NCBI RefSeq assembly: GCF_964194025.1
Contig: NC_134469.1
Span: forward strand, 8,308,001 to 8,372,000
Length of the DNA stretch: 64,000 nt
Direction: 5' to 3'
Source of the DNA: Convolutriloba macropyga
Lineage: Eukaryota
Position 1 is the first letter of the stretch. Each line of letters opens with the position of its first letter. Of the stretch, positions 55,473-59,140 are shown one piece after another. The translations under genes and the position numbers were made by a program. The notes below the pieces were generated by a model. The model was not told where the DNA came from. It ran no database searches and saw only the letters and a list, made by a program, of their open reading frames with translations.

Positions 55473-58400
55473 CTATATACACGGCAATATTAGGGACATT
55501 TTCAACAATCATTGCTGTGGGAGTTGTTAAAATACTCAATACCAAAATACCCCTTTTGACAAGGTACCTAAAATATACCCAAGATTTTACACTACTGTTA
55601 AAATTATCAGAAGAAATATGGATAATATATTTAACAAATAAAATAACAGGGGATAGTTTCACGTTGACTAGTAAGTGCGTTTGAAATGGTGCATATTCTT
55701 CATTTCATTACTGCATAGATATGTATGACCACGTAATGGTCAGCCCGGGTTGACCCCATAATTCAAAAAGTTATAAATTTACAACTTCATACTTTGGAGT
55801 CTATGAGAAGTTGTAGTCATAGAACTTTCATAAAAGGGAGTTCTGTGAAATTAAATTTTTAGTAAAGTTTTTAATACATCATGAAAAGGAGGGAAAATAT
55901 GTTTCAAAAAACTCAGCTAAAGAAATTGAAAAATTGACTTTTAAGCGAACAGAGAATTATGGAAGAGTTTTAGTCATAGAAATTCATAGAAGAAGAAAAA
56001 ATTTGTAGAAAAGTAAAGAACATTTTTCCAATGAAAAACTCATTACCTATAAAATATTCAATGCAAAACCGTCAAGTGAGTTCGCAACTAGCAAACAACA
56101 ATGAAATAAATGTTCTCGGCATTCATATTTTTGGTGAGAAAACAGACCACTTTTGAAGCATATCTTGCGTTTTTGAACTGATATTAAAAAAACACTGTCC
56201 TTATAAAGAACTGAAAGCAATATATTACTGTTTTGACTTTCGATGTTACTCCTTCTCATATTATCGGTATGTGGCACCACATTAAACTCTTTAACTGTGG
56301 TTGGCCTCTCAAGTTCATGTGCACGGGTGTAAATCTAGCACAAAGCACGGAAAGTGTGGGAAATTTAAAATTCGATGTAACATGGCTTCAGTTTTCTCCC
56401 GAAGAATTTTGGGGTAAATCGGTTACCCACAATTCCGGTTAATGTAGCTAATTCTTTCTTGAAAAGACCAATTGCTATTGCCAATGATTTTTTTGAGGAA
56501 TCAAAATTTTTTTGAAGCACATATTGTGCTTTTCAGCTGATATCAAGCAAAGTTTCACCTCATCAAGTATCGAACCACCCTATCTCAATGTTTGGGCATT
56601 CGAAATTTTTCTCTATAATGTTATCAATTTTTTGCAGCTTCTAAAATGGTTTATCTACGATCCTCCTTTCAAGTTCACGTCCAAGAGTGTAGAACTAGTA
56701 ATTATCGCGAAAGAAATATGGGAAATGGAAAAATCGATAGGTCATGAAATCAGTGCTCTTCCACAAAATTAAAGAATGGGGTAAATCGGACACCCAGGAC
56801 TTCGGTTAAGGTTGCAATGTTTTTTTCATGAAAAGACCTTTTGCTATTGCTTTTGCTAGCCTATTGACGCCAATGAATGCGCCAAAATTACAAGAAGTAG
56901 TTTTATTACTAGTATTCTTACTAGTAGGGTCATCATACTGATTTTATTTTAAATCTTTTTTCTCTTAACCGGACTAGGAAATGAAGACATTCTCCTAAAC
57001 AATGAGACGCCTAAAAAGGGATCATAGATAGTCCACGATAGATTCATCAGAACCTAGTTCACATAGTCTTCACGTCTCATCAGGGCTCGGTATATGGCCT
57101 GGACAGTCTGATAGCTTAATTCTGGAAAATTTGGATAGTCTGATCAGAGGATATTAAGTGGACTATATGCATTGATCAGAGAACTTCCAGTGTCTGCCAG
57201 GTTTGATCAGAACCAATTCTTCAAACCAGTTGAAAGAACGATTCCGAATGAAGCTTAAACAAGTGCTATGTTTAGTTTTTTAGAATGGTTATAGGAAATA
57301 AACCTCCACGGAAAAATACCACTGTCTGATACGATTAGGATAAAATCGCTCATGGAAATAAACCCCAAGATTTACATTGAATTTCGGTTGTGATAATTTT
57401 TCAGTTGTGAGTTTTTGGTAATGACAGTTTCATATTAAGGTCCTCTAAGGCATGGCCATAGCCCTCGAGGCACTACCAAATGCGCTAAAAGGCGTTAATT
57501 TTCCTTGATGTTATTTCATACCTCAGTCGGGTTTATTTTAGACGGCTTAGAATATAACCGGCTTGTTTTTAAATCTAACAATTTAGGACATCAGAACCAG
57601 TCAGCGACACAACTCTCCAAATTTGTGGAACATTTTTTTCCACATTTTTTTTCCTGGTTGATCTTACTGAGCTGAAATACCTGACAATTAAATGTTGCTG
57701 AAATTATTATACACTATACGTACACTGGTACCGAATAGATAACTAAAGTCCTTCAAGCGTTGTTTGTGCCCAGTTAGGTTGATTTGGGCTAAGGTGCGAT
57801 AAAAGCGTGAAATTTTGGAGTTTTTGCTCATTTTCTCCGCTTACAAAGAAAAGATGGTTGAGCTGCTTCGCTTTTTTTACTGTTTGCAACACTGTTGCGG
57901 TTCCTTTTACAGCTTAAAAAAAGATCTGTTTTACAATTTTCGTTACTAAAGTTACCCAAAAGTGACATGCTTGAAGAATCTCGAGGGAAGAAATTGTTCG
58001 CTTTCTTCAAAAAATGGAATAAGATTTCTTGACTTAAACACCAAAATTCGAATTCGGTCTTCCGAACACTTATGTTTTGAGGTACAATGTAATCAAATGA
58101 ACCAAAACTGTCTATTTGACGTTCAAATATATTAGAGGTTCAAGTTTACTTGTACTATTTCAAAAATTAGGAAGAAAAGTTGCATTTTCAATACCTAATA
58201 CTTCAACAACATTTTCCGATTATAAAGATTTTATGAATTTCTTCAAAGAAAATGAGCAGAAGATAGTGGAATGGTAAGCAAATACGCCCGATCGGAGTCC
58301 AATTTAAAGCTCTTAGTGAAAATATGGAATAAAAAGTTTCTGAAGTTTGAATTAGATTTCATATTAAGTTTCTTTGAAAACTACGCAAACCGTCTATTAG

Positions 58401-59140
58401 ATGTTAAGAAAACAAAATGAAATGACCCGTTACAAAAGTACTCATTTCAACTCAGAATGTTGTTCTGTCTTATTTTTGTGGCATTTTGTGTATGTCACTT
58501 TTTGGTACCATAGTGCTTTTTAAGCATATTATAAGTCTCATTCAAAACTATTGGTTTCAGTTCTGCTCAGAGCACTTTTGGATCTCATTGGTTTAAGAAC
58601 CTCAGATGTGTCATCCAAGTGCGTCTTTCACCCCTAATAACCATCGCCAGTCTAGAACAAATCTGTGCGCGGTTTAAATGTTTGCACAACTCACATTTGG
58701 GACCAGTCAAATTAGAATCTGCATAATTGTTAATACTTCTTTCAATTTGTAAATTTTTTCTTTGAACTAACCGCAACTATCACAATTGCAATTTTGCGCG
58801 CTGTATGTTAGTGTAACCTTCAACTTAGCCCTACTTCCCACTAAGGGCAATAATGGAGCCGCCCTTTCTCGAGAACAATTTTGATGTTTTCTTTAGAAAT
58901 GCGAACCAATGAGCAAAAACTAGAGTTTTTTTGCACTGATAATGGTTGCTATAGCCTGATAGGAGGTTGGGACTAGTTACCATTAAAAAGGTGTAAATAA
59001 ATCGATTTTATATTTTACTGATGGGGGCAGTTCGGGAATCGGGAATCATATAGTATTCGAAACCTATACAATATAATCAACACTACAGATTGGGAAAAAT
59101 ATTGGGTGACGTCTTTAATAAAATATCGTTGAAAAGATCC

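What the first reader, a model, noticed from the sequence alone, without database searches (positions are those of the whole stretch)
55473..59140. Same intron in paralog B has a GG donor and keeps the end-to-end stem with a compensatory change
Seen: at the identical codon position (51 codons + 1 nt) the junction is TCAG|GGATCT. Minus-strand GGGATCTTTTCAACGAT (59141-59125) pairs with ATTGTTGAAAATGTCCC (55509-55493) at 16 of 17 positions including two G-U pairs, ending 20 nt before the AG. Intron position +2 is C:G in paralog A and G:C in paralog B. The rest of the introns (1.3 vs 3.7 kb) share nothing obvious, yet TTTTCA/TGAAAA is kept at both ends. Inference: pairing rather than the GT dinucleotide is under selection, pointing to a structure-guided intron class. 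Ancestry from the TIRs of an intron-generating DNA transposon is an alternative origin. Only two copies and one covarying pair support this.
Basis: partly seen in the sequence, partly recalled or inferred. Interest (0 to 1): 0.85.

Follow-up and report, generated by a model that had tools for sequence, protein, structure and literature searches.

The report
Self-pairing intron with GG start
In an acoel worm, two neighbouring protease-like genes share an intron that starts with GG or GC instead of GT and whose two ends pair into a conserved stem; this fits a wider pattern in these worms that may show how a splicing machine copes without the usual GT signal.

Summary
The window is Convolutriloba macropyga (acoel) chromosome DNA carrying tandem paralogs of a non-catalytic trypsin-like gene. 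Family conservation of the GMGSxxG motif rules out the upstream in-phase GT and the micro-exon.

The first 16-18 intron bases pair with a segment ending 17-20 nt before the 3' AG. Duplex energies are -21.5 and -18.2 kcal/mol against a null of -8.5 +/- 2.7. A and B are saturated at silent sites (dS 1.36), yet the 3' arm is 17/18 identical and is the only alignable intron piece. Position +2 switches C:G to G:C.

The intron is absent from four relatives, so it was probably gained. In my sample of 31 annotated family introns from two acoel species, all five non-GT introns (GG, GC, GG, GA, GA) have this donor-anchored stem, and GT introns do not (p = 2e-4). All five also keep exonic CAG, +3 A and a 3' AG.

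Best reading: a spliceosomal intron with a G-only donor, helped by a selected terminal stem that possibly began as transposon inverted repeats. Splicing itself was not observed. The scan flagged the same pattern on other DNA of this genome.

The parts
59141..59295 (-). Paralog B exon 2 (155 nt, ends ...TCAG, phase 1); encodes YQYSLKPINN...TCGMGSKNGS
   Evidence: Exact mapping of RefSeq protein P0004 onto the window; sequence.
55473..59140 (-). Paralog B intron 2, 3668 nt, GG-AG (the finding)
   Evidence: This is the only AG-ending junction that reproduces P0004/P0005; the equivalent slid placements are AG-AT and GG-TA.
59125..59141 (-). B 5' arm of the terminal stem (exon -1 to intron +16)
55493..55509 (-). 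B 3' arm of the terminal stem. 17/18 identical to paralog A's arm and 100% identical in copy L001.
55473..55492 (-). B 20-nt tail between the stem and the 3' splice site. CTAAT (55493-55489) is a candidate branch site directly after the stem. The tail ends in TATAG.
   Evidence: Sequence. The branch site is inferred, not mapped.
55227..55472 (-). Paralog B exon 3 (VPIFPLKLQEA...KDEGSPLY...GGPG)
28717..28871 (-). Paralog A exon 2 (155 nt, ends ...ACAG)
   Evidence: Mapping of RefSeq P0003.
27397..28716 (-). Paralog A intron 2, 1320 nt, GC-AG, at the same codon position and phase as B
28699..28716 (-). A 5' arm (+1 to +18)
27414..27434 (-). A 3' arm: 18 bp with a 3-nt bulge, ending 17 nt before the 3' splice site
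27157..27396 (-). Paralog A exon 3
59296..62031 (-). Paralog B intron 1, canonical GTAAGC...TTTAG, no terminal stem (control)
   Evidence: duplex -8.7 kcal/mol; 6/10 anchored pairs.
54864..55226 (-). Paralog B intron 3, canonical GT-AG (control). An alternative acceptor 15 nt upstream gives isoform X1.

Best explanation
This is a real intron, specific to one lineage of an acoel trypsin-like (non-catalytic) gene family. It is most likely removed by the major spliceosome.

Shown:
- Its 5' splice site needs only exonic CAG, G at +1 and A at +3. Position +2 is free: G in paralog B, C in paralog A.
- The first 16-18 intron bases form a helix with a segment that ends 17-20 nt before the 3' AG, directly upstream of a likely branch site.
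- Both arms are kept by purifying selection.

Inferred:
- The helix brings the weak donor next to the branch/acceptor region. This would help splice-site pairing across a 1.3-3.7 kb intron and compensate for poor U1/U6 pairing.
- The helix must then be opened for catalysis.
- The complementary ends may have started as terminal inverted repeats of an inserted DNA element that created the intron.
For: 1. Junction. RefSeq proteins of both paralogs read across GG-AG (B) and GC-AG (A). GMGSxxG plus 4-6 residues is conserved without gaps in nine homologs. MASP-1 aligns across the junction with only a 2-residue gap.

2. The genes are functional. dN/dS is 0.145 and dS is 1.36 over 132 codons.

3. Stem. 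Duplex energies are -21.5 and -18.2 kcal/mol against a null of -8.5 +/- 2.7; 0.1-0.2% of random windows do as well. The canonical introns of the same two genes give -5.8 to -13.4. The stem is present in the whole-intron minimum-energy folds.

4. Constraint. The 3' arm is an island of 17/18 identity between A and B, with diverged sequence on both sides. It is the best and only meaningful A-versus-B intron match. The binomial probability for a preset neutral site is 6e-7. The arm is 100% identical in a third copy, L001, whose acceptor tail has diverged.

5. Pairing. There is a compensatory C:G to G:C change at +2. Most departures from Watson-Crick pairing in the stems are G-U.

6. Class. In 31 annotated family introns from C. 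macropyga and S. roscoffensis:
- All five non-GT introns pair 9-10 of positions +1 to +10 with a site 15-29 nt before the 3' splice site. The 26 GT-AG introns have a median of 7/10. Mann-Whitney p = 2e-4, or 7.5e-4 without A.
- The +2 partner is always Watson-Crick: G:C, C:G, G:C, A:T, A:T.
- Exonic CAG is present in 5/5 versus 6/26 (p = 0.003), and +3 A in 5/5.

7. Gain. The intron is absent at this position in paralog C, paralog D, an S. roscoffensis homolog and an intronless homolog. Non-GT introns sit at gene-specific positions and GT introns at shared ones.
Against: - No RNA reads, lariats or branch points were seen. The junctions rest on RefSeq models whose supporting evidence I cannot inspect, plus protein conservation.
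- A helix that buries positions -1 to +16 would be expected to block U1 binding, as 5' splice-site hairpins do in other systems.
- Only two copies have both arms, and there is only one fully compensatory pair. The five class members are four independent introns from one gene family.
- A few GT-AG introns also give low duplex energies (-20.3, -17.7, -16.8), though through irregular or microsatellite pairings.
- For the transposon origin there is no target-site-duplication-like similarity (p 0.4-0.8). No other copies of the arms occur in the window or L001; matches are 14 nt or shorter.
Confidence: 0.55

Rival explanations
1. The stem is a passive relic. The complementary ends are leftover terminal inverted repeats of the transposon that created the intron. 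Splicing depends only on a spliceosome that tolerates any base at +2, and the pairing has no role.
For: The intron is lineage-specific. The ends look like inverted repeats starting at or next to the junction. The same logic is documented for Fritillaria, Micromonas and Amoebophrya introns (review PMC11282704). Eurytemora GA/GG donors share the AG|G..A signature, and no stem was reported there.
Against: At dS 1.36, neutral repeats should have decayed like the rest of the intron. Instead the 3' arm is 17/18 identical and flanked by unalignable sequence. The change at +2 is compensated. No target-site duplication or family copies were found.
Confidence: 0.17
2. Each arm is conserved for its own reason, for example as a protein-binding splicing enhancer near the branch site and as an extended 5' splice-site motif (CAG|GNAYNTTTT). 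Their complementarity would then be incidental or historical.
For: All five non-GT introns share an extended 5' motif with a T run at +6 to +9 (5/5 versus 5/26, p = 0.0015). The 3' arm lies right next to the presumed branch site.
Against: Independent motifs would not be expected to be reverse complements over 11-18 bp in four independent introns whose arm sequences differ. They would also not be expected to change in concert at +2.
Confidence: 0.1
3. A different machinery removes these introns: a derived minor (U12-type) spliceosome, or a euglenid-like non-spliceosomal pathway that recognises the paired ends.
For: B's donor GGATCTTTT matches the U12-type consensus GTATCCTTT (recalled from memory) at 7 of 9 positions. 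TCCCTAAT, 17-18 nt from the acceptor, resembles TCCTTAAC. Euglenid nonconventional introns also have non-GT borders and paired ends.
Against: Paralog A's donor GCACATTTT fits the U12 motif poorly, and at least three of the five introns have no U12-like branch motif. The TCCC simply complements the GGGA at the donor. Unlike euglenid introns, all five keep CAG|G, +3 A and a 3' AG, and the 3' arm ends 15-29 nt from the intron end, not 6-8 nt.
Confidence: 0.06
4. Annotation artefact: the true mRNA uses a canonical GT (ATGG|GTTCTA, with or without the micro-exon 59063-59019), or the gene is a pseudogene.
For: An in-phase GT lies 18 nt upstream of the proposed donor in both paralogs. No reads were inspected.
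Against: Using that GT would remove the third G of the conserved GMG and the SxxG that follows, which are kept in all nine homologs. Both RefSeq isoforms lack the micro-exon peptide. dN/dS of 0.145 argues against pseudogenes. Those GT sites (GTTCTA, GTACCA) are poor donors.
Confidence: 0.05

Closest known systems
GA/GG donor introns of the copepod Eurytemora affinis (Robertson 2017, PMC5714493); also the G[ACG]-AG introns of Oikopleura dioica (from memory)
   Same: G is the only fixed base of the donor dinucleotide. The exon end is obligately AG and +3 is A. The 3' acceptor is normal. The introns sit at lineage-specific positions, implying recent gain, and are required for the full-length protein.
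   Different: No pairing of intron ends was reported there; the author noted that no nearby consensus was seen. Here every non-GT intron examined has a donor-anchored stem, and GC takes part in the same pattern.
Transposon (MITE)-derived non-canonical introns of Fritillaria borealis, and introners of Micromonas and Amoebophrya (review PMC11282704)
   Same: Non-GT borders, terminal inverted repeats and species-specific positions, while canonical introns occupy conserved positions. If the junction is slid by 2 nt, A reads AG-AC and B reads AG-AT, the commonest Fritillaria types.
   Different: No target-site duplication and no repeated family were detectable here. The 3' repeat is not terminal; it stops 15-29 nt short of the AG. 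The arms are conserved between paralogs at saturating divergence, which is not expected of passive repeats.
Nonconventional introns of euglenids
   Same: Variable borders, and a stable helix that brings the intron ends together.
   Different: Euglenid pairing is short (+4..+6 with -8..-6), the borders lack a consensus, and excision gives circles. Here CAG|G, +3 A and a 3' AG are invariant and the stem is 11-18 bp, starting at -2 to +1.
Intron stems that shorten the 5' splice site to branch-point distance in yeast ('zipper stems'), and structure-assisted splicing in zebrafish AC/GT-repeat introns (both from memory)
   Same: Intramolecular pairing between the donor-proximal and branch-proximal regions promotes spliceosome assembly on long introns.
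   Different: Those stems lie downstream of an intact, accessible GT donor. Here the donor itself, including +2, is inside the helix.

Membership tests
Major (U2-type) spliceosomal intron | GT (or GC) at the 5' end | tested here: not met
   B starts with GG. A starts with GC, which meets the feature.
Major (U2-type) spliceosomal intron | AG at the 3' end, preceded by a branch site and a pyrimidine-containing tract | tested here: inconclusive
   AG is present in all five non-GT introns. CTAAT lies 17-18 nt upstream in B. Branch usage was not mapped.
Major (U2-type) spliceosomal intron | Residual complementarity to the U1 5' end (CAG|GTAAGT) | tested here: met
   CAG|G and +3 A are present in 5/5 non-GT introns. 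CAG is present in 6/26 GT introns.
Eurytemora-type G-only donors | Obligate exonic AG and A at +3, with GA/GG at the donor | tested here: met
   One search compared with PMC5714493.
Eurytemora-type G-only donors | Introns at lineage-specific positions | tested here: met
   Alignment columns 186, 220, 236 and 238 are each unique to one gene or the A/B pair. GT introns share columns 106, 116 and 157/158.
Eurytemora-type G-only donors | Junctions confirmed by spliced RNA-seq reads | not testable with these tools
   Only RefSeq models are available.
Transposon-derived introns (introners / MITE introns) | Terminal inverted repeats | tested here: met
   11-18 bp complementary ends starting at -2 to +1. 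The 3' repeat is subterminal.
Transposon-derived introns (introners / MITE introns) | Target-site duplication at the borders | tested here: not met
   The exon end versus the intron tail is no more similar than shuffles (p 0.42-0.83). An old insertion could have lost it.
Transposon-derived introns (introners / MITE introns) | Many similar copies elsewhere in the genome | tested here: inconclusive
   No other copies in the window or L001 (about 77 kb). The whole genome was not searchable.
Euglenid nonconventional introns | Pairing of +4..+6 with -8..-6, and no conserved borders | tested here: not met
   The stem ends 15-29 nt before the 3' end, and the borders CAG|G...AG are conserved.
U12-type (minor spliceosome) introns | 5' splice site RTATCCTT, and branch motif TCCTTAAC 10-15 nt from the acceptor (consensus recalled from memory) | tested here: not met
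   B matches 7/9 and 7/8, but A and at least two others do not. Minor snRNA genes could not be searched genome-wide.
Group II or other self-splicing introns | Conserved catalytic RNA domains | tested here: not met
   No Rfam family reaches its gathering score anywhere in the window.

The most novel reading that the evidence does not exclude
Acoel worms carry a class of 'self-pairing' spliceosomal introns. A cis helix between the donor (-2 to about +17) and the sequence just upstream of the branch site would take over much of U1's job of marking the 5' splice site and bridging it to the branch/acceptor. The second intron base then becomes free to be any nucleotide as long as its partner co-varies. 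The class would be born from inverted-repeat insertions and afterwards maintained by selection on the RNA stem.
Probability: 0.35. Interest if true: 0.85.

Novelty: new variant of a known kind. Interest (0 to 1): 0.7.

Why it matters
GT at the intron start is among the most fixed signals in eukaryotic genes. Animals that break the rule on a large scale (Eurytemora, Oikopleura, Fritillaria) still lack a clear explanation of how their donors are recognised.

Here the broken rule comes with a simple, testable companion: a stem that contains the donor and ends at the branch region. The stem is conserved between paralogs whose silent sites are saturated, and it was present in every non-GT intron I could sample in two acoel genera.

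If the stem is functional, it gives a concrete mechanism for GT-independent donor definition in a bilaterian. It would also show how inserted DNA can become a stable intron.

Practically, gene prediction in acoel genomes will miss exons unless G-only donors are allowed. Stem detection could help place such donors.

Tried and rejected
1. Canonical alternatives (ATGG|GT donor, micro-exon 59063-59019). Rejected on family conservation and the RefSeq isoforms.

2. Pseudogene. Rejected by dN/dS of 0.145, although the family lacks the catalytic Ser (KDEG).

3. Gene conversion as the cause of arm identity. Rejected because both flanks of the 3' arm, including the 17-20 nt tail and the start of exon 3, are diverged.

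4. Target-site duplication. None found.

5. Arm motif as a repeat family. Nothing beyond the arms themselves in the window or L001.

6. Rfam scan for snRNAs or structured RNAs in the window. Nothing.

7. Getting a third and fourth 5' arm:
- Copies L001 and L007 give only 3' arms.
- The L001 contig ends before exon 2.
- In L007, homology to B's intron resumes just after an N run (27167-27366). I left that run alone.
- A protein search with the exon-2 reading frame found nothing.

8. U12-type reading. Considered because GGATCTTTT resembles the minor-intron donor. Not supported by paralog A or the other class members.

9. Literature searches for acoel or Xenacoelomorpha non-canonical splicing returned nothing relevant.

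10. Strong duplex energies in three GT-AG introns turned out to be microsatellite or irregular, loop-rich pairings, not donor-anchored helices.
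Full report
**What the window is.** Protein searches identify the two genes as RefSeq models of Convolutriloba macropyga, an acoel worm, on an 86-Mb chromosome. All genes lie on the minus strand.
- Paralog B is 'factor V activator RVV-V alpha-like' isoforms X1/X2 (P0005/P0004). Its exons in the window are 62146-62032, 59295-59141, 55472-55227 and 54863-54661.
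- Paralog A is P0003, with exons including 28871-28717, 27396-27157 and 25750-25566.
- A third paralog, C (P0006), starts at about 3896.
- All match Pfam Trypsin. They belong to an acoel family in which the catalytic serine is replaced (KDEGSP).

**Checking the observation.**
- The junction reads TCAG|GGATCT.
- The stem pairs 16 of 17 positions, with two G-U pairs.
- The 3' arm ends 20 nt before the AG.
- Paralog A has the same intron position and phase (exon 2 is 155 nt in both).
- Position +2 is C:G in A and G:C in B.
- The interiors do not align; the single best A-versus-B intron match is the 3' arm itself (18 nt, 94%).

An inverted repeat of this size is not rare in 3.8 kb of AT-rich DNA, where 125 comparable pairs exist. 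One anchored at the donor and lying near the acceptor is rare. Only 0.1-0.2% of random genomic windows pair as well with the donor segment. The stem also survives in the global minimum-energy fold of both whole introns.

**Is the GG donor really used?**
- Both RefSeq isoforms of B read GMGSKNGSVPIFPL, and A reads GMGTKNRTVPYFPL. These are exactly the proposed junctions.
- The in-phase GT 18 nt upstream would delete the third G of GMG and the following SxxG. Those residues are conserved without gaps in nine family members.
- The distant homolog MASP-1 aligns across this junction with only a 2-residue gap.
- The micro-exon peptide is in no isoform or homolog.
- dN/dS of 0.145 shows both genes are constrained in this frame.
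- I could not inspect reads, so splicing remains inferred from annotation and conservation.

**Is the stem under selection?** Silent sites between A and B are saturated (pS 0.63, dS 1.36), and the introns are otherwise unalignable. Yet the 3' arm is 17/18 identical and sits between diverged sequence on both sides. That argues against a gene-conversion tract. A further copy (L001) has the arm 100% identical while its acceptor tail differs at several positions. Another copy (L007) has two T-to-C changes in the arm. The 5' arms of both extra copies are unavailable: L001 ends at a contig end, and L007 has an N run there, which I left untouched. The one position that differs between the A and B 3' arms is matched by the change at +2. 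Most departures from Watson-Crick pairing in the stems are G-U, which pair only on the sense RNA. This is suggestive rather than strong.

**Age and origin.** The intron is absent at this position in:
- paralog C in the same tandem array;
- paralog D (P0013), which has a GT-AG intron 11 codons away;
- a Symsagittifera roscoffensis homolog (P0012);
- an intronless homolog (P0011).

It was therefore most simply gained in the A/B lineage. I found no target-site-duplication-like similarity and no other copies of the arms in the window or L001. A transposon origin is plausible but unproven.

**A class, not a one-off.** I mapped nine RefSeq family proteins from C. macropyga and S. roscoffensis onto their loci and recovered 31 exact introns.
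- Five have non-GT donors: B (GG), A (GC), P0017 (GG and GA) and S. roscoffensis P0016 (GA).
- All five pair 9-10 of positions +1..+10 with a segment ending 15-29 nt before the 3' splice site.
- The 26 GT-AG introns have a median of 7/10. Mann-Whitney p = 2e-4, or 7.5e-4 without A.
- The partner of +2 is always Watson-Crick: G:C, C:G, G:C, A:T, A:T.
- The same five keep exonic CAG (5/5 versus 6/26), A at +3 (5/5), a T run at +6..+9 (5/5 versus 5/26) and a 3' AG.
- They sit at gene-specific positions, while GT introns occupy shared ones.

**Mechanism.** The retained CAG|G, +3 A and AG match what Robertson described for the unexplained GA/GG donors of Eurytemora. They point to the major spliceosome with a relaxed +2.

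The added feature here is the helix. It puts the donor across from the nucleotides just upstream of the likely branch site (CTAAT in B). I infer that it helps define and pair the splice sites across long introns and offsets weak U1/U6 pairing, and that it must be unwound before catalysis.

The main difficulty is that burying a donor in a helix normally inhibits U1 binding. Either the helix acts transiently, or it partly replaces U1's role.

**Comparison with known systems.** The closest are:
- Eurytemora/Oikopleura G-only donors, which share the donor signature and recent gain but have no reported stems;
- Fritillaria and other transposon-derived non-canonical introns, which share inverted repeats and lineage-specific positions but also show duplications and family copies not seen here;
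- euglenid nonconventional introns, which have paired ends but different geometry and no border consensus.

U12-type and self-splicing readings fail their defining features. My library searches found no report of this in acoels. First-stage readers and one follow-up of this scan flagged the same pattern in other windows of this genome. My 31-intron test is independent of those notes and agrees with them.

**Verdict.** This is a new variant of known non-canonical intron classes, with the first hint from paralog comparison that the terminal stem itself is maintained by selection.

Noticed in passing
L010:5509-17411 and L010:17556-20737 (C. macropyga, gene of P0017); L009:23402-23632 (S. roscoffensis, gene of P0016): Three more non-GT introns (GG, GA, GA) in the same gene family. 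Each has a perfect or near-perfect 11-13 bp stem from the donor to a site 15-29 nt before the acceptor, and each sits at a gene-specific position.
   Followed up: yes
window ~3896-3817 and 2464-2288 (minus strand): These are the first two exons of a third tandem paralog (C, P0006). Its exon covering the A/B intron site is uninterrupted. The array order on the minus strand is B, A, C.
   Followed up: partly
window 12073-16344 (minus strand); composition 6-20 kb: Long ORFs with integrase (H2C2, rve) and reverse-transcriptase domains, so an LTR-type retroelement. It lies in a region of strong positive GC skew and negative AT skew.
   Followed up: partly
window 36350-54000; N run 37607-37942: Paralog A's RefSeq model (239 aa) lacks the signal peptide and the His57 exons that B and C have. 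No such exons are visible upstream of it in the window. It may be N-terminally truncated, or the exons may lie at the N run.
   Followed up: partly
window 54864-54878: Two acceptors 15 nt apart at B intron 3 give RefSeq isoforms X1 (+GVSVI) and X2.
   Followed up: yes
window 55013-55159 and 59617-59767: A C-rich minisatellite (CACCC and 20/40-nt units) in B intron 3, and a 68-bp tandem repeat (2.2 copies) in B intron 1.
   Followed up: no
whole protein family (alignment A2): The family is non-catalytic: the active-site GDSGG is replaced by KDEGS/DDGGP and similar, and B also has Asn at the Asp102 position. TCGMGS and CLYGVASY are strongly conserved, and the family is expanded in acoels.
   Followed up: partly
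L007:27167-27366 and the start of L001: Two independent assemblies of the B-like copy break at the same place, just where exon 2 and the 5' arm should be. RefSeq splits this copy into two gene models.
   Followed up: partly
window 56410-56457 / 56777-56824; B intron 3155-3397 vs L010:32837-33084: Repeated segments inside the B intron (a 48-nt direct repeat 367 nt apart, and a 250-nt piece 72% like an intron of another family gene). They suggest nested repeats that lengthened B relative to A.
   Followed up: no
L006:1266-5247 and L003:2083-3434: Two GT-AG introns with weak donors (GTTTGA) give the strongest end-to-end duplex energies among the canonical introns, though through irregular structures. 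It is possible that weak GT donors also lean on end pairing.
   Followed up: partly
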